Source: Monocercomonoides exilis PA203
Taxonomy: Eukaryota > Protista > Preaxostyla
NCBI GenBank assembly: GCA_001643675.2
Contig: LSRY02000006.1
Span: 1,612,001 to 1,676,000 of the forward strand
Direction: 5' to 3'
DNA length: 64,000 nt
A model generated the notes under the pieces. The model saw only the letters and a program-made list of their open reading frames with translations. It made no database searches and was not told where the DNA came from. Below are positions 8,545 through 62,145 of the stretch, piece by piece. Every line of letters starts with the position of its first letter. Within the stretch, counting starts at the first letter, position 1. The translations under genes and the position numbers were made by a program.

Positions 8545-11500
8545 CTAATGATCTTTCAGCCGACCCGAATCTTCCACTCTTTGCCTGATTAATTCTATTA
8601 GTTTCTTATCTCTAAGCAATGTCTCAATGTTGCAGAGGATGCGATATTTCCAATAATGCTTTCTATTTGAAGGCTGATTGATCCACTCCTCCCATGGATT
8701 ACTATGAAACAGTACGCCCTTGCGCTTCTCGCCTCCAATTGCAACAATATCTTGAAATGGAAAAATAGCAAGCATTGCGGGGGAATAGAAATGCATATCA
8801 AGGAGCCTTAAATGCTGTGAAGTTGGAAGATACCGAGGGACTCCTGTTGGGTATGTATAAGGAGGAGATATTGACAAAGGTTCTTCCAATGCGTCTTCAT
8901 TTTCGCTTTCACCATTAGAATATTCTTCTAAAAATTCGTTGTTTTTAAAATAATCATGCTTTTTTATTGATTGTGATTCACTCCTTTTAAATTCATTCGC
9001 ATATGAAGAATTGAGAAAGGTCGATTCATCAATAAAAGAATTGCCTAAAAGTCTGTACCAAACATCAGTTACAATGGACATTCCCGCTTTTCCTTCAGGG
9101 CTGCTGATATATTCCTTGAAGCGTTGTTCTCGTTCGTAATTTCGCTTTGATTTTCTTTTTTCTAGTTCGCTTTTTACTGATGATAATTGCATAGAAGATA
9201 AAACGGATGATTGAGAAATAGATACAGATTCATCACAACTTTTTGCATTTTCAGCCAAAATTGCACCCTTTTCTTTTTCACTATTCTTTTCGTCTTTTTC
9301 TTCGAAAACTCCATGTCTTTTCAAACTTTTCTTTTTTCCCCTGTATTTATTTGAATCATCTAGATCGCAAAGTTCCCACCAGGCACGAAGGGGAGGCATG
9401 TCGTGTGTTGATGTTGTTGCAACAACGCGCTCAGAATAGTCACTTGGATGCATGCAATGCCCTTCAATCCCATCAATTACTGATCCAGGCGCAAGGATCC
9501 CTTCACTTCTTCTTTTTTCTCTCTGTTTTTCTTCCACATCAAATGATGGCATGCGCTGCACTCGCAACCCTAAAATGTTGAATTCGTTCATAACATGAGG
9601 TACACAATGCGCAACATGCCCCAAATCCTCTCCACACATTAACATTCTCGATGATTGCTTTAACCACGAAAGTTTCCGATGACCAGATGAGCGAAATTCT
9701 TCTTCGTGCCATCGGTAAAAATAATCATCACAAAATGACAACAGTTTCTCCTTGCAATTCGCATCCAGCCGCTGATAAGATAAAGATGAGCCTATGTTGA
9801 AACGTGGCACATAATAATCATTCCCATACTTGTATAAGCATACTGAATTTTTGAGTGCCCAAAACTTCTTCATGTGCTGGTCAAATTCTCTCACTCTTTC
9901 GGCAGGCGTATCATCATTTATGCCCCACTTTGAAGCTTCGTGTGCTTCAATGGCGGCTTCTGTTTCAAACTCAGCTTTGAAAACGAAATCTCCTTCTTCA
10001 ATAGTCGGATTACCTTGCTTTAAATACTCTTCAATTACTTCTGCTGAAGTCATCTCAATTGGATCTTCAACAATTTCTTCTTCTTCATCTTCTTCCTTGG
10101 CATCATTTCTGTCTGTGATTGGTAAAGTTTGTGTAACAGAAGGAATTGTCGAATAAGAAAATGTACATTCATTTTCAGATGCGTGCGACCCGAGACATCT
10201 TCCTTTAGCCTTTTCTGCTTCAGCTCGCTTTCTCTTTTCACTCTTCTCAATTCCAAACAGGCTCTCTACAAACTGTCTGGTGATATAAGGTTTTGTAAGC
10301 TTATCGTTGTCATCCGAAACTCCTTTGAATGCTAGTCCTGTTTTATAGACCATGGAGCCAGGAACAAATCGTGCATGAAGCCCTGAACGGCATTGAAGAG
10401 GAATCTCCCAAATACGGAAAAAGCCCAAAATGTGATCGATTCGATAAGAATGGAAAAATCTGCTCATAACCTTCAGCCGATTAGCCCACCACACAAAATT
10501 GTCTTCCATTATGTTATCCCAGTTGTATGTTGGGAAATTCCAATTTTGACCTGAAACAGCGAATGCATCTGGGGGAGCACCAGCTTGTGTGTTGAGACGA
10601 AAATATCGCCTGAAGTACCACGTATCAGCAGAATGAGCATCCACTCCAATAGGCACGTCTCCTTTGAGGAACACACGAAGCTCAGCGCACTTTGCGCTGG
10701 CCTCTCTGAGCTGTTTGTCCAAAATGTACTGCACCCACATGTAAAACCGAACCAAAGGCCATGCTGGATCTTCGTTGGACACAACCTTTTCAACAACAGA
10801 TTGAACCATCTGCTCAATTTCTTTCTCTCTTTCTCTGATTGCTGCTGGAGTTTCAAGTGAAGCCGTAGATGAAGAGAGTGCGCTGTCTTCATTTTTCAAG
10901 GTATCACTTTTCTCTCCCTTCAAACTGTATGGCCACAAATGCCAATTGGTTGTGTGTTGTATTTCACTTATAGCTTTGAAAGCAGCATACGAAGGAAGCC
11001 AATACTCACTCTCCTTTACAAACTGTTCAAATTCTTCATTTCCATCGACTAGCCCTTTAGCTAAGTGATACTCGTATATTTCATGAAGCCATTTTAACTT
11101 TATCTTCAATGTTTCTTCATAGTCCATAAACTTTTTGTTTAAGTGTTTTCTTTTTGTTTCAATCTCCTCAAGTACAGATGCAGGTAAAGGATCAATAGAA
11201 TCAATATTCACATAGATTGGATGAAGCGCAAAAGATGACACCGAAGAATATGGATAAGAATCCACCCATTTTGTCTCGTGCACCATCGTGTCTGTCACCG
11301 GAAGCAACTGAATACAGCGCAATCCACACATCGAGCACCATTTAGCAAACAGAGGAATATCACAAAATTCGCCACAGCCAACAGATCTCTTTGATCGCAG
11401 AGAAAAAACAGGAATCACCACCCCAGCAGCTCTGAAATGCGGTTGAGATGGATATGTAAAGGTTCCGCATTCAATAAATAAAAATTGTGCCTTAATTTTT

Positions 11501-12577
11501 GTTTTATCCATTGGAAAAGAATTTGATGAAGAAGCAGAAGATTGAGACGACGATGCAAATGATGAATTTTGATTTTCTGGTCTTAAATCATCGTCACAAA
11601 CTTGCTGAAACAAATCATCATCTTCGTCATAAATTTCTGGTGTAGCCTTTTCTTTTACAAAATTAGTCTTTAGAAGGCCCATTTTTATTGCTTCGGTTAA
11701 TTTGATTGGAGCCAAAGCTCCGGTCCATAATTGCGCTTGACTATTTTCATCAATGCATACAATACTTGGAGCTTCAACATGCTTAACTTCTTGTTCTGTT
11801 GTGTCGCAATCACGGCCTTCGTCGTGAGTCAATACAAATTTAAAATGCAATGGAAACTCATCCTCACCAAAATTGCGCATGCACTGAAAGAGCGGAAACT
11901 CCTTATCGTGAAGTCCTTGAGCCGAGTGACAAGACCAGAAAAAGTTTTTCCTTGTTCCTCCAATCAAACGAACAGTTTCTTTTGGCGAAATAAGAGGAAC
12001 TGGAACTTCAAAAATAACAGAGTTTTGACCAACAGGTGGATTATCTAAATGTGGAAGCGATGTCGGATGCTCCCGTCGTAAGCAGACATCATGAAGAGCA
12101 GTTGTCGATGAAACGTCTTCAAAGAAATTTGGAGCCAAATGCCAAACATCTCTAACTTCCACAAGTTCTTCAAGCAAGAAATGCAACAAAACAAAGAAAA
12201 TAGATCATTTGTAAATAAGAGATTATTAATAATATGATTTCTTTTCAAACCTCCTTCAGGAATAAAAAAACAACGTATTCGGTTCACTCCATTTTCCCAT
12301 TCAATTTGTCCATCTCTTTCAACAAAATACTTTATATGCAAATAAATATATATAAACAGTACATTTAAACAAAAATATAGCAATTTTATACCTTATATTC
12401 AAACTTTACACCAGCATCGACAAGAACAAATGCTGACCATATCTCTCCATTGCAAACGCAATGCACAGCAAAGTTAGGTTTCCATTTCCCGAGAGACGTA
12501 TTGGAACCACTTATGCATATATTTTCTCCCCATTTAGTTCGATATTTCACCGAAAAAAGAACAACAATTTTTCCCAT
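8545..12577 (-). CDS. DPE2: 4-alpha-glucanotransferase, DPE2-type (N-terminal CBM20 + GH77); exons 12577-12392, 12329-12251, 12167-8545
   Basis: The spliced N-terminus gives a CBM20 (TKWGENICISGS..LGKW..FEYK|YFV..WENGVNR..VRDVW). GH77 motifs: GVVIPVFSLRS, IQLLPVTDT, SYPYS, GDVPIGV, GAPPDAF..GQNWNFPTYNW, YRIDHILGFFRIWEIP, GEDLG, LRVQRMP, TSTHD, INQP..HYWKYR. The catalytic D/E/D residues are intact. Confidence 0.93.
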
Positions 12578-13178: not shown

Positions 13179-15402
13179 ATGATAAAAAATGTTATTATTG
13201 TCGTTTATTTATTCACATTTTTTATTGATATAAGTATTTGCAATGAAACACCTCAACAATATCACTTTACTGTGTTCCACACAAACGATGGTTTGCTGGA
13301 AAGATCTTTTTTAGAAAATATTTGAATATCTTTAATTTGACTCACTATTACAGTGCATGGCTGGGCTAACGGTAAACCCCATGAAAAGTATTTTGATGGA
13401 TCTTTGGCGGATTACGAAAATTTGATTTGGCATTCAAAAAACAAAGCAAATTCTACTCATATTGTTCTTTCATTCGATTCTGGAGATTGGACAGTTGTTT
13501 GTTTTCCAATCATAAAATTTATGTATTGTCACGTTATATATATTTCTATTTGGCGATTAAACTAGGGAACAGGATTGTCTGACGGAACGCCTATTCCTGG
13601 CTCTTTTATGTTTGAACTTGCTTTCAACATGTCACTTGATGCTTGGTCAATGGGAACTCATGAATTTTACAGCGAAAATACCGTACGCTTTATAAATCAA
13701 AATGTTACAAAATTGCTTGGAGAAAGGTTGAGTTATTTGTTTATGAAGAATGAGTGATAATCATTTTAATAAAAATTTAAATAGGTATCTTGCTGGAAAC
13801 ACAAAAATGAAAAATACATCTGCACCGATTGCAAATACTCACATCATAAAAGATTTTCCAGGATTTGGCAAAGTTGCTATTTTTTCTTTTATGTATACGT
13901 GGAAGCCTCCAACTGATGTTGCATTTATTACTGATATGAAAATTGCTTTAACAGAGAGTCATTATGTGGATACCATACAAAATAAAGAAGTGAAATTTGC
14001 AATTGTTTTAGCGCATCTGGATCCAGGTTTTGAAGAAGCAACACAAATAATTGACGATATTCACTCAAAAAGACCAGATGTTCCTGTGCTTTATCTTGGG
14101 GCAAACACCCATTTCGAAAACGTGACGCATAAAGGAAATGGGAAGCAGCTTCGAATACAAAGTGGAGGATTTTTTTACCAAATTGGTAAGATTGACTTTG
14201 ATCTGATTCCTTCAAAAGATGCTGATGAAGCTCAGTTTTCAATAGCAAATGAAAAAGTTGTATTTATTCCAACAAATGTGGCTGAAATGAAAAAAGCAGC
14301 AGGATTTGCTGAGCATTCCAATTCGTCCCCTCAATCATCTCAAAAAGAAGGACTGGCAGCTTATTCGGAAGATGAATGGGAAACAGAAAATGGAAAGAAG
14401 ATGAGAGAAGCAACAAGAGCGCAGGTTTCGCAGCTTGGATTAGATGATGTCATGGGCTGTTCTCCACAGACATACTACAAATTCCAGAATGCAAGTTTAA
14501 ACGAGTCACTGTACAATTTGCTGTTGAACACGGTGTATCCAAGCATAAACCCATATCCGAGGAGCCTTGACAAAAAGGAGGATCGGATGACTTATGAACA
14601 GTGGCTGGAGTGGAATCGGACAAACGGAGAAACTTCACCCGCCGAACAAGCTCCAAAGTGCACGATTACTGTTTATGCGTCAAACTATGCAACACAGCGG
14701 ACTTCAATGTTTGAAGGAAGTGTTTCTATGGATGATGTTATCTCTATCGATCCATTCAATTATAAGCTGTGTTCGTTCAGAGATCTCAAACACTCCCATC
14801 TGCAGATGATGTTCAACTCAGATATTGAGTCTGCAAATAGTGCAGAGTGCGAAGAGGAAGATATTCTGTGCCAAAACAATTCACCTCACAAGCATTCTTT
14901 CTCTTCATCTGGCATTACTCGCTCTCCTTCTGATTCACATCATTCATCTGGGCTGTTTCAGCAATTTAGACATTCAAATGACATTCTGCCATTTGTCGAC
15001 CGAATGAACTATTCAAGATTCATTCATACGGATGTCTGCGAATACGACATCATATCTTCCACATACGACTGCAAGAGGATGCAAGATATTCTAAATAAAA
15101 TTCTTCCATCACAATATTTCTATTTGACCCATCCAAGTCAAAAAAGAACAAGAGAAGTGTGGTTAGAATACATGAGGTCTTATATGCAATGCCCACTCAC
15201 TCGAAAGGGCGATCATAAGCGCGCTGCTGGATATATCGGATCCGGAATCGCTTTATTGATATTAGTGTTTTTATATTTTGCAAGTCTTTGGATATATTTA
15301 GAATTAAAAAGATATCACAGAAAAATAGCATATCACAGATTGAAAAACAAAGAAGGATCGATGATGACTGAAATTCGAAAGAATTCAATAAAATTATCTT
15401 GA
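13179..15402 (+). CDS. 5'-nucleotidase-like calcineurin-type metallophosphoesterase with signal peptide and C-terminal TM anchor; exons about 13179-13290, 13354-13496, 13566-13726, 13785-15402
   Basis: Spliced motifs FHTND|VHGW, DSGDWTV|GTGLSD, MGTHEFY, GER|YLAGN, LAHLD, LGANTH, IQSGGF and DPF match the fungal YHR202W-like nucleotidase pattern. Hydrophobic N-terminus; TM helix IGSGIALLILVFLYFASLWIYL. Confidence 0.8.
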
Positions 15403-15764: not shown

Positions 15765-18700
15765 ATGTCAAGTTTTCCATGTTCTGGAGACTCTTCACCA
15801 AGATCATTTGAAATTACAAAACAGAAAAATGAACAGCTAGAAAAAGAAAACAAAATGCTGAAACTTTCTGTTCAGGAACAAAAACAGCAAATTGAGCGTC
15901 TGACAAGCCGAATTCATGAACTTGAATCGAAAGTTTCATTTCTCCACGAAGATTATCTTGTATGACTTATATTTTTGTTGTCCTTTGCAATTAATGTCAT
16001 TCCCTTTTAATAGATGAAAATACAAACGCTTAGAGACAAAACAGATCATTCAAAGGATATTTTTTCAAATAATAATTCAACATCCACAAACTTGCCATCC
16101 TTTGCTGTACAGCGTGGATTATTTGGATATTCAGACAGCATGCATTCTCGTCGCATGTCATTTGATGCTCGTGCGTCTCATGATATGTTTGTTCCATCGA
16201 CTTTGTCTGCACTGCCTTCTCCCGCAGCTGAAGAAGAATCGTCAATAATTCAACAGAAAGAAGCCACGCGTCTTGAATTGGTGGGAACAGTCGAGCCTAC
16301 AACGTCTACAGTTGATGGTTACGTGAAAAAACGCAATTTTGATTCCGAAAGGGCATGCGTTTTAGGTGTTTGTGTGATGGACAAAAAAGCCACTTCAAAG
16401 CCAATGCACGAAATACTGAAGCGAATACAAGAGCATGGAGACATAAAAATTGTCCACTTTGGGGAGCAAGTTATCAAAGAGCGTCCAGTGACAGAGTGGC
16501 CGCATTGCGACATCTTGCTATCATTCTTTTCTGGTGGGTTTCCAATTGAAAAAGCAATTGAATATGTGAAATTACGTAATCCGTTCCAAATAAACGATTT
16601 ATGCGGCCAGCTGGATCTCTTCTCAAGAGATAAGATTTATGAGCGTCTAACACAGCATAACATTCCAGTCCCTTCGTATGCTGTGATTTATCGGGATGAG
16701 TTTGGTAATCCGAATCCTTTATGCAATGTGGAAGAACACACAAACTACATTCTCATCGGAACCAAAAGAATCACCAAGCCATTTGTTGAGAAGCCGCTCG
16801 ATGCAGAAGACCACGATGTGTGGCTGTACTACCATTCTGATCAGGGCGGTGGAGCGCGAAGAATGTTCCGAAAGAAAGACAACAAGTCGAGTGAGTTTGA
16901 TCCGTCAATCACGCACATCCGCACTGATCGCTCGTATTTGTATGAGGAGTTCATCCCGGCGGATGGGTCGATGGACGTGAAGGTGTATGCTGTTCTGCCA
17001 GACTACGTGCACTGCGAGCTGCGGAAGTCGCCTACAGTCGATGGGATTGTGGAGCGCGATGCAAACAAGAAGGAGATACGCCGAGTGACACAGGCAACAG
17101 AAGCAGAAAGGCACTACGCGCAGATTATCGGGAAGGTCTTCAACCAGCGTGTGTGCGGGTTCGACATGCTGAGGAAGACGCGGAATGGGAAGACTCAGAC
17201 GTACGTGTGCGATGTGAATGGCTGGTCGTTTGTGAAAGGCGACCCGAACTATTACGAAGGCGTGTCTCGTATCCTGCGCAATCTGATGCTGCAGGCAAAA
17301 GCAAGGTTGAAGCAGCCAAAGCCGTTGCTTCACCCAGCAATTAGCGAGAACGACCGGAAAAGCGCGACTCTTAAACGTGTTTCTGCATACTTCAAAAGCG
17401 GAGAAAATGAGCCAAAGCAAAAAGTGAAAGTGCTCATCAGCTCTGAGAACTTTCCTCGATTAGTTGAGTTTTTTTCCACTTTAGCTTATCTTGTTTCTTT
17501 TGCTTCCAATGAATACATTTTCGGTGGAACATGTCCGTCGCTCCGAGGTGTTGTTGGGGCGTGCACCAGCTTTGAGGGATGGCAAGACGATGACGACGTT
17601 GCAGATTCTTTTGAGATTCTTGAGCATCGTCGGTCACACATTCATTTTGCTTCTATAATACAGGAGCTTCGTGCTGGAGAGAAGACAGTTGCCGACGCTT
17701 CTCAGTGCAACTCCCAAGCATCTTTGTTGTCAACATCCGTTGAAGCTCAACCGATGCTGCCGAATGCATCTGTACAGCCTTCTTCGTCATCTACAGCAGA
17801 AGAAGACGCACAGTGCCAATCTGATGAGTTGCACACAGATCGAAGTATTTCTCCGTATATTTTCGGAGGACAGCACATTTCACAGCCGATTCCAACCCTG
17901 GCGCCACTTTCTGAAGGCGCATCTGATGACAGCAACGCCCAGCGCCCTTCTTCCACTTCTCCTTCTGTTACTGCATCACAAACTGCAGCAGATGAACCGA
18001 AATCATTGCCTTCTGTACAGCTTCCTGAACAGATGTCATCTCCTATGACCAATATGGCATTAGCATTAGATGCTTCTATTTCTTCTCTTTCAACAGAAAA
18101 TGGTCGGACAGCATCGTCTTCACCACATGCTTGGACGCTGCCAGTATCGCCAAGAAAAATGGAGGCGACCACTTCAAACTTTGCTGCACCTGATCCTTTG
18201 ATTCAAGAAGATGAGTTATTTGTTGCAGAAAATGACATATCAGATGCAAGTGTGTGTTCTGACCAGGCCTCGCTGATTGCCGTGTATTCGCCTCCGTTCT
18301 CTGCCCATCGACATCGCTCTTCCTTTTCGAGCACTTCGAGTGTATCGTCAGCTGAATTTGCACCGCCTTCAGCTGTTCCCATTCAAAAGCCTGCGTCAGG
18401 TGCGCTGTTGCCACCCACCACTTTCCGCTTTTTGCCGTCTTGCGTGCATGCCAATCTCCCGTTCCCTGCCCACGAGACTTCCTTCTCACCACCAGAACCG
18501 ATACCGTTTGCCGGCAATGAGTCTGCTCCTCTCAGATCTGCCTCTGCAATCAGCATGAACAGCAGCTTGTATCGCTCAACGGCTGGCAGCCCTTCCCAGC
18601 TCTTTTCAAATTATTTCCAGTCAGATACGCAATTGAAGGCCAAACTGCGGAGTGACAAGAAGCGGAAGAAAAGAGACCGCAACAATGGATTTTCCATCTC

Positions 18701-21700
18701 AATCAAAAGCAACCCTGAGATTTTCAGAAAATTCTATACTATTTTGAAGGAGGAGCTGGAGAAAGCGTTTCTTCTTGCTGCGCAGACAGGATCAGTTGGA
18801 GAATCAAAAGAACAAGCAAATTCGTATTCTCCGTCTCAGAGTTATGTAATGCCATCTCCGCTGATCACAGCCCCAACCTCTGTTTCTTTGGCAACGCCAT
18901 CAACCGTAATTTCTTCTGCATCATCTTCTTCTGCTGCTACTACTACTTCTACTTCTTCTTCAATCTCTGCAAATCCTTCTTCGACTTCATCTTCTGCTTT
19001 GCCATATCCAACAAACAATGCTTCATCAGCACAGCCGACTTTCATCCACCCAATAGCTTCGTCTCCTGTGCTGTCGCATCCGCCATTGGTTTCCTTTGAG
19101 CCTCAAAGCAAACAATTGCTAGCACTTCGCAGACAGCAGCAGCAAACAAGCCCAATGCCCTCTCATCCGTGCGACCGCCAATCGAAAAAGAGTACAGCTG
19201 CAACTTCTCAAGCGAACGGTGTGTCTTCCCCAGCACCTTCGTCCCCATCTTCCCATCCAACAGCGTTTGTCAGGCCCCAATCAGCTGGGCAGTCATCTCG
19301 CAACTCAGTTGCCTCTGATCGGATGTCTGTTGTGCACTCCGTCGACGAGGAAGGCGACGAGCGCAACGAAAACAACTACAACTTCCGCTTCCGCCTGCGT
19401 GTGATGGATGTGGCGACGGGGAGCGAGGATGTTCTGGAAGCATTGCAGGACATACTGGCTGTGATGGAAATGGGGAGAAGAGGGCTGAAGATAGAGGCAC
19501 GGACTGCGAGGCTGACGCCAAGTGGAGATCTGTGCGGATTGTATAAAGAGCCAACGTCTAAGAAAAAGAGCAAGACGAAGAAGATGCAGCAGCCAAAGAA
19601 GAAGGGTGTTGAGAAGAAAGGCGAAGATGAAGAGAAGACGGATAGCTACACGCATTTGACTGATATGGACGAGGAAGGAGAAACAGACCAGCTGGAAAGC
19701 GACATTGGCAGCGATGTCGACGTTTCAGACACTGCCTCTTTCTTGTCTTCTGCCTCGTCTGCAATCAATGCCCCTGACAATCTGTTTCCAAACGAGCCAG
19801 AAGAAGTCACATACATCGTGCTCACCTGTCGCTGGGGTGGTACTCTGAGCCATTCTGGCTGGCGCGCATCGCAAATGCTGGGGCAGATGTTCCGCTCGAT
19901 CTTCTTGCCGTCGTCGCAGCTGTCTCCGGTGCCTTCGCCTGAAGCAGTGGCCGAGTGCGATGCGAAAGACGGTACCGAGTTCGTCCGCTCTGCCACCTTC
20001 CACACGACCATCCAGCGACGCTCGCAGGCATCGGCAGTCGGCTTTGCGGATGCGTTCTACAGTGGAACCATGAACAAAGACGCAGACCCGAGCGATTTGG
20101 CTGACCCGGCGCAGCTCATCACGCAGCTACCGTGTGTTTCTGAGCTGCAGAAGAAAGATCACATTCTTGTCATCGACTCTCCGCTGCTCCGTGGTGACCA
20201 GCACGAAAACGCGAGGATCCGGCTGTGGGACATGAAGAGCAAGCTGAAGAATGTGCTGATTGTGAACAGGGAATACGGCTACGAGCCAGAAGACTACGAC
20301 AACCCGATCATCGCAGCGCTGCTGTCGTGCGGGCTGAAGAAGCTGGGCAATCCTCACGCGCGTCTGGTGGCTATTCATTCTTCGATGCACTCGTTTATCC
20401 GCCGCCTGGAGAGCATTGAGAAGGGCAACAAAGGAAAGTCCTGTTTGGACTTGACAGCAGAACTGGAAAAGGAAAGAGCCAAAACGAAAGAGAAAAGAGA
20501 GAATTCTGTTCCGAGTCAGCTGTCTTTGTTCCAACAGACAACAAGCTCCACCGCAAATGCTTCGACAAATACAAACACGGATTCTGTTTCAGATGAGTTC
20601 GGAAAGATGACTATTATTTCTGCTTCGTCTGCTGCTTCAGCAGCATCGCCTTTTTCGAGTGAAGCATCTCCAGCCACATTTTTTTCTCTGATTGGTCCAT
20701 CATCCACAACAACAACTACTACTACTACTTCTTCTCCTTCTCCTTCTTCTTCTCCTTCATCATCGTCTTCTTCTTCTTCAACAACTACCAACATTATTAC
20801 ATCCTCTTCTGCTTCCACTTCTGCTGTTGTTAATGCTCCCTTCTCTGTGTTGGTGCCAACAGATCCATCATATCATCAAGATACTTCTCTGTCATCCTCA
20901 TCTTCCTTCTCTTTCTTGCCTCCGATTGCTTCATCTACTTCATCATCATCTCTATCATCAACTACTCCTGAGCCTCCTTCATCTGCATTCCTCCCTCTTC
21001 ACCACACCCGCTCTGCCCCAACATCTCCTGAGGTTCGGTCGATGGGAGACCCAAATTCACCTCCACATGCAGACACTTCGCTTATCCTCAGCACAAAAGT
21101 GCATTCGCACCAGCAAGACACTTCGGCTGATTCCGCTTTTGCACAAACAGACAATTCAAACGCTTATCCGTTTGCTCCTTCGTCTGAACTGAATGTTTCT
21201 GTGCCGCCAAATAAAAACGCACCCACTCTTGAATTCCTATCGCCTATCACTTCTTTGTCCAATTATCCTGCTTTGTCTACTTCATCTGTTCAAATGCTTC
21301 CAACATTTTCAAATTTATCAAGTTCAACTTCGTCATCATCCTCCTCCTCCTCCTCCTCATCATCATCATCATCATCAACTCCAGTTTCTTCCTTATCAAC
21401 TGCACCAATTATACGCACGCTAACTACAAAGAACTCATCTCCTTCCAATTCTCAGACGACTTCCTCGCTTTACAAGCAGTCTTCAACAGATGTTCTGGAT
21501 GGCTCATTTGTCGGATGCGGAGGAGAATCGCTCTCGTTAATCAAGCAGCGGTGGAAGAAGTTGTATCACTCGCTGCGGCACGAGAATGGCGAGTGGAACA
21601 CGTCAATCATCATCAACATCTATCAGAACTTGAAGTGGGACATCACCCATAATGCTCCCCTGGCTGAGCTTCTGAGCCCGCTGTATCAGACAATCGCTCC

Positions 21701-24620
21701 GCTGGCTTTCTTTATCCAGCCGTTGGAGTATGGAATCCTGCTGCGACATCGCATTCAGATATCAAGCGACTTTGCTGGGGAACTGATGAAGCGCGAGATG
21801 AAAGAGCTTGTTGGAACCGACCAGTCATCTGCACCAAAAGCAGAGTTCTTCTTCACTGACGATGCAACCATCAACTCGCTTGTGGATCAGATCATCCTGT
21901 CGGGGCTGCCTGGATTCCATCTCGAGTCTGCCAGCACACTGGGCGAAATGAACTACTCTTCCTTTGTGCTCTTCAAGACATACGCATCTGCCACAGGCAA
22001 AGTGTGGACGGATGTTGAGGTGTCTGCAGGAATCAGCGAAAATCCGTTCCAGATGGTCGGTCCAGCACACACACTGCCTCTGAGCCAGCCAGTTGCATTG
22101 CGCGAGGCTATCTGCAAGGAGGATGCAAAGGAGTGCTTCTTCGGAAGCAGCATTCCGATGGCAATTGTTCCGCGACACGAGACACTCAAAGGAATTGTTG
22201 CTGTGTTCCGCCACGGTGATCGAAAGCCCAAGCAGAAAATGAAGCTGAATGTAACGAACACGAAAGTTTTGGACTTGTTTTTCCCGCTGGAGGAGATTAA
22301 CCTTATCATAAATGCACAATCTCTTCCAGATTCTCTGAAGAAGTGCGTGATAACTGCTTCTCGTTCCTTTGATAAAAAAACATGGGCACAAACATTTGGC
22401 AATCCTGAGGACGCGATGTCTTCAACAGCCTCTGTTGGAGCTGCCGGCAAAGAAGCTGCGCCTCGCTGGCCTGACTCCATCCTTCTGAAACAGGAATACT
22501 CAAACGAGCAGTTTGAGTCGCTGATTAGTCTGCTTGTTGAAGTCATTCACGACAGCAGCAGGAAGCAAGAGGACGAAAAGCACAAGCCAGTTCTGTCGAT
22601 GCGGCAGAGGCAGAACGATGAGTATGAAGGATACATCAACCTGCACGCTGTCCTCTCAAAAAGCTATGTCGGCATGAAGATCCAAGTGAAGCCCACGAAA
22701 GTTCAGCTGCGAACTGTTCGGATTCCGCAGCCCACTCAGAAAGCAAACACTTCCTCTTTCAAGCCAATCGCAGACACGTCGCGAAGGCAGCGCTCCACTT
22801 TCCCCAGGCTCAAAGCAAAAGTGGACGAATTCCTTCGCTTCCTGCGGACGGCTGCGGCTTCTCCTCCAACTGCCTCTGGCATCGGTGACAGTAGCAATGC
22901 AAATCTCTCTGCTTCTCAATCATCCCTCTCTTCAGCATACCCCCACTCATCGTCTGCCCCTGCTCCGATTGTTCCTGAATATCGAGAAAAGCAGATCGTT
23001 GTTGTAACTGAAGCATTGCTTATTGTGAAATGGGGTGGCAGCCTGACACATGCAGGATATCATCAATCGAAGCAACTGGGAAGCCTGTTTCGTGAAACGG
23101 TGCTTCCGCTGGACAGGGGAGAGTGCAGAACATTCCTGGACAATGTGCATGTGTTCACGAATGGCGAGAGAAGAGTGGAGAGAACAGCAAGAGCATTCAC
23201 CGAAGCGCTGTTTGGTTTGGATGATCATGAGCTGGTGCAAATAACTCTTGCCTCTCAACTGCTCGATACGGTGCCAGACGAAGCAAGAGACTTTCTTGTT
23301 CAAACCAAAAAGAGGATGCAAAAGATTATGCTTATGAACTATGATTTTTCTATCTCGGGGCAGCCTTTGATAACTCCGGAATCGGAAAAGAATGTATATC
23401 TCAATTCTTCGTCTTCCTCAGCATCTTCTTCTTCTTCCACAAACTCTTCTGCAAATTCAAATTCCACAACTAATCTATCTTCAGCAGTTAATGACACATT
23501 TTCTGCTCTTCAGCCTTCGCATTCAGATTCGCTTTCGTCTCTCACACAATCGCGGGCAGCATCGTCTCCTATATCCACATCTCCGTCTGCTTCATCTCCG
23601 ACTTCTTCGTTCACATTTCGATCAACACTTTCTAATTCTTCTTTGAACATGTCTTCATCTCCATCATATGTGCCACATCGCTTCCACGCAAACATCGAGA
23701 AAATCAAAAATTCACTGCGTGTTTCGGAAGAAGAGCGCAACGACTTCAAAGGAACAACAAACGAGGCTGAGTTTGGGAAGCTTGCGAAAGAGTTTGTGGA
23801 TGACATCATGCGGTGCAAGCCATGGGGCCTGGCGCAGATTGGAAACCCGCTTGCGCGTCTGGTGCGTCTTGACAGAGGGATACAGTCGTTGAGGGATGAT
23901 CTGGCACAGAAAGTGGATCAGCTTGATCCCACACAGTATTATGCCCCAATGTGCGAGCATGAGTCATTTCGCACCATGCAGCATCGATGGGAGAAGGCTA
24001 CTGTTGATCTCCATGACCCAACGACCAACATATGGGATGTGACTAAGATTGGAGATATTTACGATTCGATCCGGTTTGATGTGATTCACATGAAGGACAT
24101 CTTGTCGCGCCTTTCTGTTCCAATGAACGACCTGCTTTCGAATGCAAAGGCATTGGCAGACTTCTGGGTGACACAAGAATTTGGCATTTCACATCAAGAT
24201 AAATTCAAAATAGGAAAGCTCATTGCTGGCCCACTGATGAGCCATATTGTGTCGAATATTGAAAATGCAGCGTTTAATTCCGCGCCATCAGTTGATCTGT
24301 ACTTCACCTCTGAATCTCATCTTCATGGGCTTTTGAACTTGATCATGCTTTCTGGGATTGACGGACTGATGTTGGATCGGGAAAGCATAATGGGGTTGGA
24401 CTATCTGACACACATTATTTTCAAAGTGTATGAAGCTGAACAGTCAAAAACATTTAGAGTCGAATTGTACATCTCAAGTGGAGCAATTCCATGCAATCCA
24501 AAAATGGATCTTGGTCAGACTCATGCTCTCCCTATTGAATCTCCATTCCTTGTTCACGAAGGCTTAACTCTTGTTCAGCTCAGACAAATTTTAGAATCAT
24601 TTGGTCCTGTTAGTAAATGA
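15765..24620 (+). CDS. VIP1: Inositol hexakisphosphate/diphosphoinositol-pentakisphosphate kinase (PPIP5K/Vip1) with tandem histidine-phosphatase domains; exons 15765-15959, 16014-24620
   Basis: Phase-0 intron 15960-16013 (GT..AG). ATP-grasp kinase motifs: LGVCVMDKKATSKPM, WPHCDILLSFFSGGFP, KPFVEKP..EDH, GGGAR.MFRK, YLYEEF, DVKVY, RKSPTVDG, VCGFDMLR, VCDVNGWSFVK. Phosphatase motifs: RHGDRKPKQKMK, LLIVKWGGSLT, LYFTSESH, LDYLTHIIF. Confidence 0.95.
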
Positions 24621-25118
24621 AGATTGTGTTATTGATTAGAAATGTTAATCGATTACAATAATCGTTTTCTTCTATATTTATTTATATATATTTCGCATTT
24701 TGTTTTATAAGTTTTTATGATTTCGTTTTGCTCTGTATGTTTTTTTGGAGCATTACTTTACAACATTTCAGTGTACGCGAAGAGCATAACTATTCATTCA
24801 TTTGGCTTTATTTGTAAAAAATTTTTTAAATTAAAAAAAACAGAAGAAAAGTTCAATTTTATCTGCCTGTCAATCTCCCTCATTTTTTTATAGAAAACAG
24901 ACTTTTTTCTCATACACTGTTTCATATGTTCACACACGTTGATAAAATGATGGTTGAATTTCAATTTAATGACACTTTTTTCATGAAATTGAGAATAGTT
25001 GTCATTAATAAAAATGTGAGATAAATAATACAAATTTCATTATGATAATACAAAGAAAAATTTCTTATAATTCAAAAAGATTAAATGGAATTGAAATTCT
25101 CATACCCATAAGAAACGA

Positions 25119-26240: not shown

Positions 26241-28945
26241 TCAAGGATGGATAGAGGAAGTTATTAAAATCTGCTGATGTGAATTTGATGGTGTGTGTTG
26301 TGTGTTATTAGAAGATGAGATGATTGTCGGAACAGTTGGTGTAGACTCTGTCGAAGGAATAGAATCAGGCGGCGACGAAAGAGAGTTTGGAATGAAGCTT
26401 GAGGAAGGAGAGGCGGTTGGCGGGATGGATGTAGGCAAAGTGAGCGAAGTGCTGATGCTCTCAGTGACTGCGGGTGTGCAGCGAGCAGATGAGTGCGAAG
26501 AGTGCGGAGAAGAGGCAGTGAGAACTGGCGAAGTGGGGTTGGATGAAGTGCTTAGAATAGAAATGGCAGAGGAACTGCTAGAGCTTCCAGTTGAATTAGA
26601 AGATGGAGAAGTAGAAGATGAAGAAGAAGTGCTTTGAAGTGACAGCTGTGAGAAGTATGATGGTTGCCTAGCAAATACACTTGGCGGAGAAATGAATTGA
26701 GCGCGCGACGAGGCAGCCTTTGGCGATGGGGCAACAGGAAGAGGCGAATATGACATTGACAGAGAAGAAGGCTTCCGTTGAAGTGGCGGAGTCTGCTTTG
26801 ATTTCCCGTATGAAGAAGTCGATGGAGAGAGAACAGACTTCTTTCTGCTTTCGTCGCGCTTTGAAGGAATTACAAACTGCTCTCTGGGAACAGACATGAA
26901 GTTGGTGTTATCCTGCTCATTAGGCTGAGAGCTGCCATTGTGAGTGGTAAGATGAGAGTAAGAGCCAGAAATAGACGAGGAAAGTCCTCTTTGATGTGTT
27001 GTGTGTTCAGAGCCAGCATTCAGCGGAGGCTTGCAGAGCTGAGACGCCGATCCTGAGTGAAGCGAGAAAGCACTGCCTCGTCGCGGCAAGATGGTGAACA
27101 AAGGAGATGACGGAGATATTGCCATTGTTGATAGAACAGCCTGTGTCTTGGATCTGTTTCCGAGATGAGATACAGATGGTACGGGAGAAGGTGAAGGAGA
27201 TGTGGCAGAAGAAGATCCCGTATTTGAAGAGTCGAAGCGAGGAAATACAGACATAGAAGCAGAGGCAATTCGATTTGGGGTTATTGCCTGTGAATTCATG
27301 AACGAAGATTGCTTGTTTTTCTGCACCAGTTGTGAAAGCGAGGAAGAAGGTAAGACAGGCAATGGCTTTGAGGCAGCATTTGGAGAGAAGATAATGGAAT
27401 GTTGATTTCTCCCTTTCATAAAAGATGAGGATTCTTGCTCTTGATCATCAAGGTCATTCTTTCCTTCTTGCATCAAACCTTCGTTTCCGGCTTTTTCGTG
27501 CCCTTTTGTTGGTTTCTTGTTCTTCTTCCGCCTTCCATTTGAGTCGTACTCTTCTTCGCTGTCTGACTCCTCTTCATCAGACTCCAGCTCATCCTCGCCT
27601 ATCCCTTCCACTCGCTCTTCAGTTGCATCAATCCCAATTTCGTCCTCTTCTCTTTCATCGCTGTCGCCATTCCCTCCTTCAGCCCCGTTCATCTGAAGCA
27701 GCATTTCCCTCACCTCTTCAGGCAATGTCATCTCGTTCTTCACTTTCTCTGTGATAATCATTGAGTCTTCGCGAAACTCAAAATTCAGCCTTGACATCTC
27801 AAAAAATGGGACAACTGGCACAGGAGTGTGAACTGACTGGACAGAAGATACTTTCGAAAGAGAAGGTGCAGGATGAATTGAAGAGGCTGGTATGTTATTT
27901 TTGGATCCACTGGAATTGTTTGAAATGTTGTTCGAAGTGCTGACATGGTTTATTAGTTCATTTGACAAATTGGATGAAGAAGAAGTTATTGTTGAATTAG
28001 TTGTCCCGCTGTCTAAAAGTGATGCATGCGAATTTGCGGCTGATGTTAATGAGTGCTGAGAAGGATGTGAATCGCTAGATTTTGGTACTTGCATTGAAGA
28101 AATTGAGCCTGTTGTGGATTCTGAAAAACTTGATGAGTCATTGTTTGAAAGAGGTACCGTTGTTGGAATATCTGTTGGAACAGAAGACAATGGAGGTATC
28201 GCAATAGGTTGTGAAATTTGTAAAGTGTTAAACTGTGTTGATTCCGTTGATAGTTTATCTTGTTGTAATACTGTCTCTGTTGTCATTGCATGCGTGCAAT
28301 CAGGAGAGATATCGCAAGGGGAATGCTGCGAACTCATTGCGGAGTTACTAATTCCTACACTCTCTGCACCAACCTACAATGCAATATGCAAATAACAAAA
28401 AAAATTGACTGTTCTCAATTAAAAATCAAATATAGTCAAACCATTGGCGTCATATCTGAATGTCGATCTCCAGATGGAAATTGTCTTGTTAATTTTTCAT
28501 AGTGATATATCTGATAATGATGAATATAAAGAAATGGAAAGATTACGAATGATATCACTGTTCCAATCGATAGAAAAGTATAATATGTAATTGGATTTGA
28601 ATCTGTCATTCCAGATACAAAATCAAATATAACTGCAAATAATTCTATTATAATGCAATATAGTGGTGTTCTAATTCAGTTGATATAAATTTTAAATTTC
28701 AATTGTCAAGTAAACAAAATAAAAATTAATAAAAACCGTTTGATTTTTGTGTGTTCAAATTTATGCAGAGGTTGATACAACGGAAGTGCAAGTGCCAATG
28801 TTAGAAAGTGTATGGCAAATGGTATCCAACAGGAAAATATGAATCCGACAATAATTCCAGCAATTTGAGCTATTAATAGAACTGTTGTGAATATTAACAA
28901 TCTTGAGTTTCTAACTGGTGACGAAATAGTTGGAGTATGATTCAT
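26241..28945 (-). CDS. Hypothetical protein with about 4 N-terminal TM helices and a long Ser/Thr/Pro-rich tail; exons 28945-28737, 28670-28442, 28373-26241
   Basis: Two GT-AG introns join the 80-aa hydrophobic ORF, an unlisted hydrophobic exon (TPLYCIIIELFAVIFDFVSG..YYTFLSIGTVISFVIFPFLYI) and the 698-aa ORF in frame. Confidence 0.7.
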
Positions 28946-61600: not shown

Positions 61601-62145
61601 CTCCGGCTTCTAATGATAATGATGAAGACACTTCAACCAGCAAATCGCAGAAGTCTCCCCAGACCCTCTCGAAAGCATCTAAAAGTTATGCAGACAACGC
61701 CAGCCTACCAAATGTGCTGAACTCTGATGAGGCAGGCACCGAAGCCAGAGATAGAGGCGATATTCGAGACAAAGACGAAGAGACGCTGAAAAGACCAGAA
61801 ACTGCTCATTCAGTAAACAGCCAGCAGCATCAGCAAAGTAGTTATTCACAAACAAGCAGACCGAAAGATGTGGAAGAAAAACGTACGAATTCCGATGCAG
61901 CTAAAGGAGGAATTGAAAGTTTGGGCCTCCGCGAAGATTTATCTCTCTCTGAGCAGATTGCTGCTCTTCAAAACAAAAAACTCGAAGCAGCAAGTGCGAC
62001 TAACGTCAGTGCTCAAGGCACGCTTCTTGGAAAAGTGACTCATACTTACACAAAGAAAGCATTGCTTAACAGAACACGGCAAACTCAAAAAGCATCCACA
62101 CTCCCTGATCCTCCGTCTTGGAAGCCTACAACAAGTCCATATTAA
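52638..62145 (+). CDS. EF-hand + WD40-repeat protein (WDR49/EFCAB8/WDR64-like) with extensive Ser-rich insertions; three short 5' exons, a fourth short exon, then a long exon from about 53364
   Basis: Spliced EF-hand loop IFRKIDANSIGR|IPWAEF and WD motif FFTG|SNDGQIKSW. Many WD repeats: VTASLDSTMKLFD, ISGSMDHTVAIWN, GHAAPV, SLGMDGCIRIWD, VTGSLDGFIKVWN, ASADDGSLAAWN, GIDGKLRFWS. Confidence 0.85.

What the first reader, a model, noticed from the sequence alone, without database searches (positions are those of the whole stretch)
17367..24617. PPIP5K/Vip1 with a whole-domain duplication: dead phosphatase followed by an intact phosphatase
Seen: every phosphatase landmark occurs twice, colinearly. 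TLKRVSAYFKSGENEPKQKVKV (about 17367) vs TLKGIVAVFRHGDRKPKQKMKL (about 22183); LTCRWGGTLSHSGWRASQMLGQMFR vs LIVKWGGSLTHAGYHQSKQLGSLFR; LGNPHARLV vs IGNPLARLV; CGGESLSLIKQRWKK vs CEHESFRTMQHRWEK; IYQNLKWDITHN vs IYDSIRFDVIHM; LEYGI vs QEFGI; FFFTDDAT vs LYFTSESH; HTLPLSQP vs HALPIESP. Copy 1 has lost the RHGxRxP phospho-His motif and the second His. Established: yeast, plant and animal Vip1/VIH/PPIP5K have one kinase and one phosphatase domain. Inference: an old duplication kept in frame, with copy 1 acting as an allosteric or ligand-sensing pseudophosphatase, or as an intramolecular dimer partner, in inositol pyrophosphate signalling.
Basis: partly seen in the sequence, partly recalled or inferred. 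Interest (0 to 1): 0.8.

Follow-up and report, generated by a model that had tools for sequence, protein, structure and literature searches.

The report
Metamonad PPIP5K with tandem phosphatase domains
This gene of the mitochondrion-less protist Monocercomonoides exilis encodes an inositol-pyrophosphate kinase/phosphatase whose phosphatase domain is present twice: a catalytically dead but well-preserved copy, then an intact one. The same layout occurs in relatives including Giardia and appears not to have been described.

Summary
ORF 16014-24620 (+) encodes 2868 aa with no stop codon. It has a PPIP5K/Vip1 kinase domain followed by two colinear Vip1-type histidine-phosphatase domains. PD1 covers residues ~449-2045 and PD2 residues ~2054-2864.

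PD2 has every catalytic and structural landmark. PD1 reads KSGEN where RHGDR should be, so it cannot form the phospho-histidine intermediate. It still keeps:
- the adjacent substrate-binding lysines;
- the WGG hinge;
- all four zinc ligands;
- the core arginine.

PD1 is predicted to fold like yeast Vip1 PD and is under purifying selection. More than 1000 residues of low-complexity insert are threaded through it. RNA-library contigs run unspliced across the PD1/PD2 junction.

The second M. exilis paralog has it, as do both Blattamonas paralogs, Paratrimastix, two Carpediemonas paralogs, Kipferlia and Giardia muris. Trees place all PD1s together and all PD2s together, which indicates one duplication before Preaxostyla and Fornicata split. 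Kipferlia and an unnamed diplomonad-like sequence keep RHxDR in PD1. The nucleophile was therefore lost at least three separate times.

I found no paper describing this layout, but I could not read Randall et al. 2020. PD1's function is inferred, not shown. My best guess is a non-catalytic inositol-(pyro)phosphate-binding or regulatory module.

The parts
16014..24620 (+). Whole gene: intron-less ORF of 2868 codons plus stop; metamonad-type PPIP5K/Vip1 (kinase-PD1-PD2)
   Evidence: ORF list and translation. RNA-library contigs lie colinear with no joints over 16431-20695, 20795-21317 and 21389 to about 24604. All sampled words of 20200-24700 are held in run X1.
16311..17348 (+). ATP-grasp inositol-pyrophosphate kinase domain (residues ~100-445; PPIP5K2_N at 116-202)
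   Evidence: PF18086, 119-122 bits against a cut-off of 35. 64-65% identity to Blattamonas and 47-50% to plant, algal and Carpediemonas PPIP5K kinase domains.
17358..22148 (+). PD1: complete but catalytically dead Vip1-type histidine-phosphatase domain (residues ~449-2045), interrupted by two large low-complexity inserts
   Evidence: The canonical PD HMM hits positions 4-40, 120-296 and 252-545 in order. PF00328 scores 27.7 bits. BLASTP against PD2. Orthologous PD1 is present in 9 other proteins.
17394..17408 (+). PD1 degenerate catalytic loop K461-S-G-E-N465, in place of R-H-G-D-R
   Evidence: Column-by-column mapping to ScVip1 R547/H548/R551. It is followed by the retained residues P467, K468, K470 and K472 (ScVip1 P553, K554, K556, K558).
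17511..19394 (+). PD1 insert 1: ~630 residues rich in Ser/Pro/Thr/Ala, inside the GAF-like insertion domain
   Evidence: No HMM coverage. No similarity between paralogs or orthologs apart from short blocks. The P553-to-G646 spacing is 808 aa, against about 92-123 in canonical enzymes.
19395..19544 (+). PD1 remnant of the GAF-like domain (residues ~1128-1177)
   Evidence: Block conserved with the C47 paralog (58% identity) and with both Blattamonas proteins. Predicted helix plus strands with pLDDT 70-81.
19794..20516 (+). PD1 core part A (residues 1261-1501): RWGG hinge, Zn-ligand His, core Arg, start of the alpha-helical insertion domain
   Evidence: HMM positions 120-296. pLDDT up to 97. Residue table.
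20517..21503 (+). PD1 insert 2: ~330-residue Ser/Thr-rich low-complexity tract (residues 1502-1830)
   Evidence: pLDDT 25-36. The read tool's skipped repeats at 20696-20794 and 21318-21388 lie here.
21504..22148 (+). PD1 core part B (residues 1831-2045): rest of the alpha-insertion domain and the C-terminal core, with Zn ligands Cys, His, His
   Evidence: 28% identity to PD2, E = 7e-22. 58-60% identity to the C47 paralog. pLDDT 92-96.
22173..24605 (+). PD2: intact Vip1-type phosphatase domain (residues 2054-2864), with RHGDR at residues 2066-2070 (nt 22209-22223)
   Evidence: PF00328, 100 bits. HMM positions 4-553. Every ScVip1 functional position tabulated except the variable Lys817 is canonical. 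Sequence match to ScVip1 PD structures 9GRN/9GRH/9GRO, E = 7e-37.

Best explanation
The gene encodes the Monocercomonoides exilis version of a PPIP5K/Vip1 architecture shared by Preaxostyla and Fornicata. It has an N-terminal kinase that makes 1-pyrophosphorylated inositol phosphates, followed by two tandem Vip1-type histidine-phosphatase domains.

Shown:
- The two domains arose by one internal duplication before Preaxostyla and Fornicata diverged.
- PD2 keeps all catalytic and structural residues. It is the presumptive 1-pyrophosphatase.
- PD1 has lost Arg547, His548 and Arg551 of the RHxxR loop (ScVip1 numbering), each of which is needed for activity in yeast Vip1.
- PD1 nevertheless keeps the fold, the four zinc ligands, the WGG hinge and the lysines that contact 1,5-InsP8 in ScVip1. 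It evolves under purifying selection.
- PD1 sits at a constant distance from PD2, even though hundreds of disordered residues have been inserted elsewhere.

Inferred:
- PD1 is a pseudophosphatase kept for a non-catalytic role. Most likely it binds InsP6 or PP-InsPs without hydrolysing them and thereby tunes the neighbouring PD2 and/or the kinase, as a capture, sensor or regulatory module.
- The ancestral tandem had two active phosphatases. PD1 was inactivated independently in oxymonads, in Carpediemonas and in Giardia muris.
For: Architecture and colinearity.

Organism: the genome is 82,301,135 bp in 101 contigs, which equals the M. exilis PA203 ONT assembly (PMC8767320).

One transcript unit: contigs from four RNA-library runs of one study cross nt 22164-22182 without joints. 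X2 record 10 is 3257 nt and runs from 21389 to about 24604.

Same layout elsewhere:
- M. exilis paralog on contig C47.
- Blattamonas P0001 and P0002.
- Carpediemonas P0132 and P0250, Paratrimastix P0251, Kipferlia P0254, Giardia muris P0400, and the unnamed P0255, P0257 and P0253.
- The M. exilis genome has only these two PPIP5K kinase loci.

Single duplication:
- In the C-half tree, PD1s form a clade at 97/92 and PD1+PD2 form a clade at 95/90.
- In the full-domain careful tree, the PD1/PD2 labels need one change in 100% of bootstrap trees. All 22 metamonad rows sit on one side of a branch at 90/86.
- Both copies mirror the species groupings.

Residue states, mapped to ScVip1 through and interpreted with PMC11836120:
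- Mutating R547, H548 or R551 to alanine greatly reduces hydrolysis.
- The RHR-AAA mutant still binds 1,5-InsP8 in the crystal.
- K554, K558, K644 and K732 contribute to binding.
- The Zn site is H651, C793, H836 and H1064.

Fold: the AlphaFold2 model of residues 1083-2050 has 283 residues at pLDDT of 90 or more. Its nine best Foldseek matches in the PDB are all ScVip1 PD, E = 1.5e-10 to 2e-8.

Selection, M. exilis paralogs compared over 454 PD1 codons: pN 0.29 against pS 0.67. dN is 0.36, against 0.24 for PD2 and 0.17 for the kinase.

Junction length: 52-60 aa in 9 of 10 proteins.
Against: - No biochemical data exist for any metamonad PPIP5K, so ligand binding by PD1 is inferred from conserved residues only.
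- The GAF-like lysines K623 and K627 could not be aligned by HMM in the oxymonad PD1s. By eye they read K..E..R.
- K817 of the outer site is Glu in PD1, although it is not conserved in PD2 either.
- The Carpediemonas PD1-PD2 model has pTM 0.54, so it gives no confident fixed interdomain geometry.
- ScVip1 kinase and phosphatase domains behave as independent modules (PMC11836120). Allostery between domains therefore has no precedent in this family.
- The RNA evidence comes from assembled contigs of an RNA library, which may contain DNA.
- dS is saturated, so dN/dS is only an upper-bound style estimate.
Confidence: 0.72

Rival explanations
1. PD1 is a purely structural partner. It would act as an intramolecular pseudo-dimer or scaffold that positions or stabilises PD2 (or the kinase), or docks other proteins, without binding inositol phosphates itself.
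For: - The PD1-PD2 junction length is nearly invariant (52-60 aa) although intradomain inserts vary from about 100 to over 1100 aa.
- The fold and Zn site are preserved.
- In Carpediemonas the dead PD1 keeps the Zn ligands while PD2 has lost three of them, which hints at structural interdependence.
Against: - The residues specifically retained next to the dead loop (P553, K554, K556, K558, a basic residue at K644, and K732) are ligand-contact residues in ScVip1, not obvious interface residues.
- ScVip1 PD is a monomer in solution.
- The tandem model has pTM of only 0.54.
Confidence: 0.2
2. PD1 is a decaying relic of a duplication, tolerated as a long linker and on its way to becoming low-complexity sequence.
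For: - PD1 evolves faster than PD2 (dN 0.36 against 0.24).
- It has absorbed more than 1000 residues of disordered insert.
- The catalytic loop is degenerate, and degenerate in different ways in each oxymonad protein.
Against: - The structured blocks are retained in every protein from lineages as far apart as oxymonads and Giardia.
- pN is far below pS.
- pLDDT exceeds 90 over about 280 residues.
- The four Zn ligands and the hinge are intact.
- There is no stop codon or frameshift in 4.8 kb.
Confidence: 0.04
3. The layout is an artefact: an assembly duplication, or two adjacent genes (a kinase with a dead phosphatase, and a separate phosphatase) that are merely read through in the same frame.
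For: A Carpediemonas-like record (GCA_002919055.1) has the locus called as two ORFs overlapping by 4 nt. RNA contigs cannot prove a single full-length transcript.
Against: - The two copies are only about 28% identical, so this is not an assembly repeat.
- There is an uninterrupted frame across the junction in ten independent proteins from at least seven species and two M. exilis loci.
- RNA-library contigs of 2.6-3.3 kb cross the junction.
- Only about 15 residues separate the domains, which leaves no room for a terminator, promoter or start codon context.
Confidence: 0.02
4. PD1 is still an enzyme that uses a different nucleophile or chemistry, for example the Ser that replaces His.
For: An acid is retained at the Glu991 position, the core Arg is kept, and a basic Lys stands at the Arg547 position. 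Kipferlia and P0255 show that PD1 can be fully RHxDR-competent.
Against: - Three of the residues needed for activity in ScVip1 are changed at once in M. exilis.
- The replacement residues differ between closely related oxymonad proteins (S, F, P at the His position). A conserved new nucleophile would not vary like this.
Confidence: 0.02

Closest known systems
Canonical PPIP5K / Vip1 / Asp1 / VIH (e.g. S. cerevisiae Vip1; PD structures 9GRH, 9GRN, 9GRO)
   Same: - The same N-terminal ATP-grasp kinase (PF18086).
- The same Vip1-type phosphatase domain, with RHxxR, a GAF-like insert, the KWGG hinge, an alpha-helical insertion domain, a Zn site and the FTSESH motif. PD2 matches at every tabulated ScVip1 position except the variable Lys817.
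   Different: - There are two phosphatase domains in tandem instead of one.
- The kinase-proximal one lacks the nucleophile loop.
- Very large low-complexity inserts make the protein 2868 aa, against about 1000-1500 aa.
Other metamonad PPIP5Ks in public records (Blattamonas nauphoetae x2, Paratrimastix pyriformis KAJ4460437.1, Carpediemonas membranifera x2 including KAG9393072.1, Kipferlia bialata GIQ81227.1, Giardia muris TNJ28398.1)
   Same: The same kinase-PD1-PD2 layout. PD1 and PD2 are each orthologous across species, and the junction length is the same.
   Different: - The state of the PD1 loop differs: RHADR in Kipferlia and RHGDR in P0255 (both intact), RHGDI in Paratrimastix, RYADR in Carpediemonas, RSGDR in G. 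muris, and KSGEN / QFAEN / SPCER in oxymonads.
- The Fornicata proteins are compact (about 1450-1900 aa), while the Preaxostyla ones are inflated by inserts.
Receptor-type protein tyrosine phosphatases with tandem D1 (active) and D2 (inactive or weak) domains (own knowledge, not tested here)
   Same: A duplicated phosphatase domain kept in one polypeptide, with one copy catalytically impaired and serving regulatory or binding roles.
   Different: An unrelated fold and chemistry (Cys-based PTP against His-based acid phosphatase). The order is reversed here, with the dead domain first. The substrate is a small-molecule messenger, not a protein.
OCA-clade pseudophosphatases related to the PFA-DSP (Siw14) inositol-pyrophosphate phosphatases (review PMC13573052)
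   Same: Catalytically dead relatives of a PP-InsP phosphatase retained in protists and fungi. They are proposed to modulate the active enzyme.
   Different: They are separate genes of the cysteine-phosphatase fold. The review's summary table lists pseudoenzymes only for that family, not for the histidine-phosphatase (PPIP5K) family.
Histidine-acid-phosphatase-fold pseudoenzymes (e.g. flea acid phosphatase pseudoenzyme, PDB 8GDL)
   Same: A branch-2 histidine phosphatase fold that has given up catalysis. It appears among the structural matches of the PD1 model, rank 13, E = 0.025.
   Different: A stand-alone secreted protein of an animal, not part of a bifunctional signalling enzyme. The structural match is only weak.

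Membership tests
PPIP5K / Vip1 family (whole protein) | N-terminal PPIP5K-type ATP-grasp kinase domain (Pfam PF18086 plus a RimK-like ATP-grasp) | tested here: met
   PF18086 scores 119-122 bits against a cut-off of 35, at residues 116-202. There is a weak RimK hit at residues 304-403. Kinase identity to named PPIP5Ks is 47-65%.
PPIP5K / Vip1 family (whole protein) | C-terminal histidine acid phosphatase domain with an RHxxR catalytic loop | tested here: met
   PD2 scores 100 bits on PF00328 and has RHGDR at residues 2066-2070. It matches ScVip1 PD structures at E = 7e-37.
PPIP5K / Vip1 family (whole protein) | Dual-domain layout: one kinase domain and one phosphatase domain | tested here: not met
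   There are two complete phosphatase domains. The literature describes a dual-domain enzyme (PMC8024741; PMC11836120).
PPIP5K / Vip1 family (whole protein) | 1-kinase activity on InsP6/5-InsP7 and 1-pyrophosphatase activity on 1-InsP7/1,5-InsP8 | not testable with these tools
   This needs recombinant protein and NMR, CE-MS or malachite-green assays.
Catalytic branch-2 histidine phosphatase (PD1 considered alone) | Sequence membership in His_Phos_2 (PF00328) | tested here: met
   27.7 bits against a cut-off of 23.6 on residues 440-2050 alone. The canonical PPIP5K PD HMM covers positions 4-545.
Catalytic branch-2 histidine phosphatase (PD1 considered alone) | RHGxRxP loop with the nucleophilic His and two substrate-binding Arg | tested here: not met
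   PD1 has K461-S-G-E-N-E-P467, so Arg, His and Arg are all replaced. Alanine substitution of each greatly reduces ScVip1 PD activity (PMC11836120).
Catalytic branch-2 histidine phosphatase (PD1 considered alone) | Histidine-phosphatase / Vip1 PD fold | tested here: met
   The AlphaFold2 model has structured blocks at pLDDT above 90. The nine best Foldseek PDB matches are ScVip1 PD (E = 1.5e-10 to 2e-8), followed by phytases and glucose-1-phosphatases. This is a prediction, and it lacks the beta-1 strand, which lies more than 600 residues upstream.
Pseudoenzyme (pseudophosphatase) | Homologous to an active enzyme but lacking residues essential for catalysis | tested here: met
Pseudoenzyme (pseudophosphatase) | Retained under selection rather than decaying | tested here: met
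   pN is 0.29 against pS 0.67 between the M. exilis paralogs. Orthologous PD1 blocks are found from oxymonads to Giardia. The Zn ligands and hinge are intact.
Pseudoenzyme (pseudophosphatase) | Demonstrated non-catalytic function (ligand binding, allostery, scaffolding) | not testable with these tools
   There are only indirect hints: conserved ligand-contact lysines and a constant junction length.

The most novel reading that the evidence does not exclude
The metamonad ancestor would have built a three-module inositol-pyrophosphate switch, with one kinase and two active phosphatases. The kinase-proximal phosphatase was then converted at least three separate times (in oxymonads, in Carpediemonas and in Giardia muris) into a non-hydrolysing PP-InsP/InsP6 receptor. 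This receptor would feed the messenger level back onto the kinase and PD2. If so, these anaerobic protists carry a built-in sensor domain that no studied PPIP5K has. They would also offer natural 'RHR-dead' and 'RHR-live' versions of it (Kipferlia, P0255) for direct comparison.
Probability: 0.3. Interest if true: 0.75.

Novelty: new variant of a known kind. Interest (0 to 1): 0.58.

Why it matters
PPIP5K/Vip1 is treated as the textbook case of one kinase and one opposing phosphatase in a single protein, and that pairing sets the level of the nutrient messenger 1,5-InsP8. If a whole eukaryotic lineage, including the Giardia genus, runs the switch with an extra, mostly dead phosphatase domain, three things follow:

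- It is a natural experiment on how this switch can be regulated.
- It shows repeated conversion of an enzyme into a pseudoenzyme inside one polypeptide.
- It marks a feature absent from host (animal) PPIP5Ks that is worth examining in parasite biology.

It also gives a shared derived character linking Preaxostyla and Fornicata. The practical cost of testing is low. The compact Carpediemonas, Kipferlia and Giardia proteins should be far easier to express than the 2868-aa M. exilis one.

Tried and rejected
1. Word-indexed protein search with residues 1826-2868. It was swamped by low-complexity words and gave only 10 hits, so it could not be used for a survey. I replaced it with kinase-region searches and the exhaustive profile search.

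2. Kinase-based ranking. It did not bring close relatives to the top, because the kinase is about 47-50% identical to nearly all eukaryotes. Only Carpediemonas surfaced.

3. hmmalign in glocal mode lost the PD1 N-terminal strand in oxymonads because of inserts of over 600 aa. I used local hmmsearch hits mapped to HMM columns instead.

4. dN/dS. Synonymous sites are saturated between the two M. exilis paralogs, so I quote only pN/pS and dN.

5. Intramolecular pseudo-dimer. The tandem AlphaFold2 model of Carpediemonas PD1-PD2 gave pTM 0.54 and no interdomain read-out. This neither supports nor excludes the idea.

6. Folding the complete M. exilis PD1. It spans about 1600 aa, over the 1200 limit, and would have required joining non-contiguous pieces. 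I left that step out and folded only the contiguous residues 1083-2050.

7. Literature. Randall et al. 2020 (Adv Biol Regul 75:100674), the main phylogenetic survey of PPIP5Ks, is not held. I cannot exclude that it mentions the Giardia layout.

8. A second reads call to lay a silent intergenic control was not possible, because the cap is one call.

9. Assembly artefact and two-gene readings were considered and rejected (see rivals).

Full report
**What is in the sequence**

The window belongs to the 82,301,135-bp, 101-contig genome G000. That is exactly the size and contig number of the Monocercomonoides exilis PA203 ONT assembly (PMC8767320).

A single open frame runs on the + strand from an ATG at 16014 to a stop at 24618-24620, 2868 codons, in a GC-richer island between AT-rich spacers.

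**The duplication is real**

- Pfam finds PPIP5K2_N at residues 116-202 (119-122 bits against a cut-off of 35).
- It finds His_Phos_2 both on residues 2051-2868 alone (100 bits) and on residues 440-2050 alone (27.7 bits against a cut-off of 23.6).
- BLASTP of the two halves gives four colinear alignments with E = 7e-22, 2e-9, 1e-3 and 0.014, at about 28% identity.
- I built a 570-position HMM from 17 single-domain PPIP5K phosphatase domains of other eukaryotes. It runs through the protein twice in order. PD1 takes positions 4-40, 120-296 and 252-545 on residues 449-2038. PD2 takes positions 4-553 on residues 2054-2864.

**State of the two copies**

I mapped columns to yeast Vip1 numbering through the PDB alignments. 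I used the 2025 ScVip1 PD structure paper (PMC11836120) for the meaning of each residue.

PD2 is canonical at every tabulated position except the variable Lys817:
- R-H-G-D-R and P553.
- K554, K556, K558.
- the K-x-Q-x-K strand of the GAF-like insert.
- the KWGG hinge.
- the Zn ligands His, Cys, His, His.
- the core Arg, K732, and Glu at the 991 position.

PD1 reads K461-S-G-E-N465 in place of R-H-x-x-R. Each of these three residues, when changed to alanine, greatly reduces ScVip1 PD activity. PD1 is therefore catalytically dead by the family's own criteria.

PD1 nevertheless keeps:
- P553, K554, K556 and K558 immediately after the dead loop.
- a basic residue before WGG, and both hinge glycines.
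- all four Zn ligands.
- the core Arg and K732.
- an acid at the 991 position.

[quoted passage not shown] Its loss says little.

**PD1 is a folded domain threaded with disorder**

An AlphaFold2 model of residues 1083-2050 used an alignment of 30 homologous segments. Its confidence along the sequence is as follows:
- pLDDT 70-81 over residues 1128-1177, a remnant of the GAF-like insert.
- pLDDT up to 97 over residues 1261-1501.
- pLDDT 92-96 over residues 1831-2045.
- pLDDT 25-36 over the Ser/Thr/Pro-rich tracts between these blocks.

The nine best Foldseek matches in the PDB are all ScVip1 PD chains (E = 1.5e-10 to 2e-8), followed by phytases and glucose-1-phosphatases.

The spacing between P553 and the hinge is 808 residues in PD1, against about 92-123 in canonical enzymes. 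The spacing between the hinge and the Zn-ligand Cys is 559 residues, against about 160-200.

The complete PD1 spans about 1600 aa and exceeds the folding limit. Joining its pieces was not attempted.

**Expression and gene structure**

Four RNA-library runs of one study hold 96-100% of the sampled words of 20200-24700. Laid on 16400-22390, their contigs are colinear with zero differences and no joints:
- One 4325-nt contig covers 16431-20695.
- Contigs of 2.6-3.3 kb start at 21389, cross the PD1/PD2 junction (nt 22164-22182), and by their length reach about nt 24000-24610.
- The only breaks are at low-complexity repeats that the tool skips.

This supports an unspliced message carrying both domains. 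It does not prove it, because contigs cannot show transcript ends and an RNA library can contain DNA.

**Relatives**

The M. exilis genome has exactly two PPIP5K kinase loci. The second lies on contig C47 in a 4743-codon open frame and has the same kinase-PD1-PD2 order.

The best long homologues in the 5.8-billion-protein index are two Blattamonas nauphoetae proteins (2198 and 3258 aa), and both have orthologous PD1 and PD2. Carpediemonas membranifera P0132 (1508 aa) has two complete domains back to back, at residues 371-994 and 996-1498.

I then ran a profile of the C-terminal half of the domain exhaustively against 1.84 billion representative proteins. It returned 1181 hits. Among the 150 best, the proteins with two full copies were these:
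- a second Carpediemonas paralog.
- Paratrimastix pyriformis.
- Kipferlia bialata.
- the Giardia muris cluster.
- an unnamed Logan protein (P0255).
- two partial records (P0257; and P0253 from a Carpediemonas-like assembly).

All other proteins examined have one copy, sometimes split by an insert. That is about 390 in all, spanning plants, animals, fungi, algae and other protists. Trichomonas is reported to lack PPIP5K altogether, and Giardia intestinalis to have one (PMC8024741).

**One duplication, several inactivations**

In a tree of the C-terminal half (38 rows), PD1s form a clade (97/92), PD2s form a clade (84/70), and the two together exclude other eukaryotes (95/90).

In a full-domain tree (66 rows, 512 columns, LG+C20 PMSF, careful search):
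- The PD1 and PD2 labels need one change each in 100% of bootstrap trees.
- Both copies reproduce the same groupings: oxymonads with Paratrimastix; the two Carpediemonas paralogs; Kipferlia with the diplomonad-like sequences.
- All 22 metamonad rows sit on one side of a branch (90/86).

The simplest reading is a single internal duplication in a common ancestor of Preaxostyla and Fornicata.

The PD1 catalytic loop reads as follows:

| Lineage | PD1 loop |
|---|---|
| Kipferlia | RHADR |
| P0255 | RHGDR |
| Paratrimastix | RHGDI |
| Carpediemonas | RYADR |
| G. muris | RSGDR |
| M. exilis (both paralogs) | KSGEN |
| Blattamonas A | QFAEN |
| Blattamonas B | SPCER |

Intact loops are interleaved with broken ones on the tree, and the replacements differ. 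The nucleophile was therefore lost at least three times, in oxymonads, in Carpediemonas and in G. muris. PD2 is RH[GA]DR everywhere.

**Constraint on PD1**

Between the two M. exilis paralogs, the alignable PD1 blocks (454 codons) are 58% identical, with pN 0.29 against pS 0.67. dN is 0.36 for PD1, 0.24 for PD2 and 0.17 for the kinase. Synonymous sites are saturated. PD1 is thus more relaxed than PD2 but clearly under purifying selection.

The distance from a conserved Gly near the end of PD1 to the Arg547-equivalent of PD2 is 52-60 residues in nine of ten proteins (85 in Paratrimastix). The same proteins have accumulated inserts of hundreds of residues elsewhere. The junction is evidently not free to vary.

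**How it most likely works**

Shown:
- It is a bifunctional PPIP5K with an extra phosphatase-fold domain, nucleophile-less and maintained, between the kinase and the active phosphatase.

Inferred:
- PD2 performs the 1-pyrophosphatase reaction.
- PD1 binds, but does not turn over, InsP6 or PP-InsPs. The residues it has kept are those that hold 1,5-InsP8 in ScVip1, and the ScVip1 RHR-AAA mutant still binds that ligand in the crystal.
- PD1 could then act as a capture or sensor module, or as a fixed partner of PD2.

An AlphaFold2 model of the compact Carpediemonas PD1-PD2 pair folds both domains (mean pLDDT 71.6), but its pTM of 0.54 gives no confident interdomain geometry. ScVip1 PD is monomeric, and its kinase and phosphatase domains act independently. 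Any allostery would therefore be new for the family.

Two alternatives are very unlikely. Decay to a mere linker is contradicted by the conservation data. A gene-model or assembly artefact is contradicted by ten independent in-frame proteins and by the RNA contigs.

**Comparison with what is known, and novelty**

The protein is a PPIP5K by kinase and PD2 criteria. It fails the family's 'one kinase, one phosphatase' layout.

Reviews and the structure paper describe a dual-domain enzyme. The 2026 review's summary table lists pseudoenzymes only for the cysteine-phosphatase (PFA-DSP/OCA) family.

Full-text searches found nothing describing this layout. I searched for PPIP5K with Giardia, for inositol pyrophosphate with Giardia, for 'two phosphatase domains', and for PPIP5K or Vip1 with metamonad names. 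Randall et al. 2020 could not be read.

The sequences themselves are in public databases under automatic names. What is new is the recognition of the architecture and of its history, not the genes. I therefore class it as a new variant of a known kind, of solid but not exceptional interest. The functional idea remains to be tested.

**Procedural notes**

No spliced model was needed.

Noticed in passing
G000 contig C47:270564-284795 (loci L007+L008): The second M. exilis PPIP5K paralog sits in a 4743-codon open frame. About 1700 residues precede the kinase domain and have no Pfam match. A short stretch of them resembles the N-terminus of Blattamonas P0002, so the extension may be real and conserved.
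   Followed up: partly
P0002 (Blattamonas nauphoetae, 3258 aa), residues ~2685-3146: A complete Phospholipase B domain (PF04916, 165-170 bits) follows PD2 in the deposited protein. Neither M. exilis gene has it, so it is probably a fused gene model of a neighbouring gene.
   Followed up: partly
P0132 and P0250 (Carpediemonas membranifera), PD1 against PD2: The dead PD1 keeps all four residues that bind the structural zinc in yeast Vip1. The catalytically intact PD2 has lost three of them (H651R, C793G, H1064T). Kipferlia and the Giardia-like proteins have lost Zn ligands in both copies.
   Followed up: partly
L010 = GCA_002919055.1 contig PPCM01001224.1, 680-5229: A Carpediemonas-like tandem PPIP5K is called as two ORFs overlapping by 4 nt. 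One carries the kinase plus a weak His_Phos_2 match (774 aa). The other carries His_Phos_2 (742 aa). The cause may be a frameshift or an artefact of the gene caller. The organism was not identified.
   Followed up: no
L009 = Logan ERR3333381 contig 252 (P0255, 2171 aa): An unnamed protein, sister to the Giardia muris one, keeps an intact RHGDR loop and the Glu in PD1. At least one diplomonad-like organism may therefore have two active phosphatase domains. The source organism is unknown.
   Followed up: partly
window 8545-12189 (-): A 1214-aa ORF with a strong 4-alpha-glucanotransferase (GH77) match (363 bits). It is much longer than typical disproportionating enzymes.
   Followed up: no
window 53323-62145 (+): A 2940-aa ORF with several WD40 / beta-propeller regions (residues ~1300-1650 and ~2000-2130). 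It has no other Pfam assignment.
   Followed up: no
window 13750-15402 (+), 26241-28337 (-), 43009-45003 (+): Three ORFs of 550-698 aa have no Pfam match at E <= 0.001. The first two flank the PPIP5K gene.
   Followed up: no
G000 contigs C8:806962-807687 and C64:160888-161403; C54:258516-258635 and C31:959138-959254: The genome also has two IPK-family (PF03770) loci and two weak SPX-domain (PF03105) matches. Other parts of an inositol-pyrophosphate signalling pathway therefore seem to be present.
   Followed up: no
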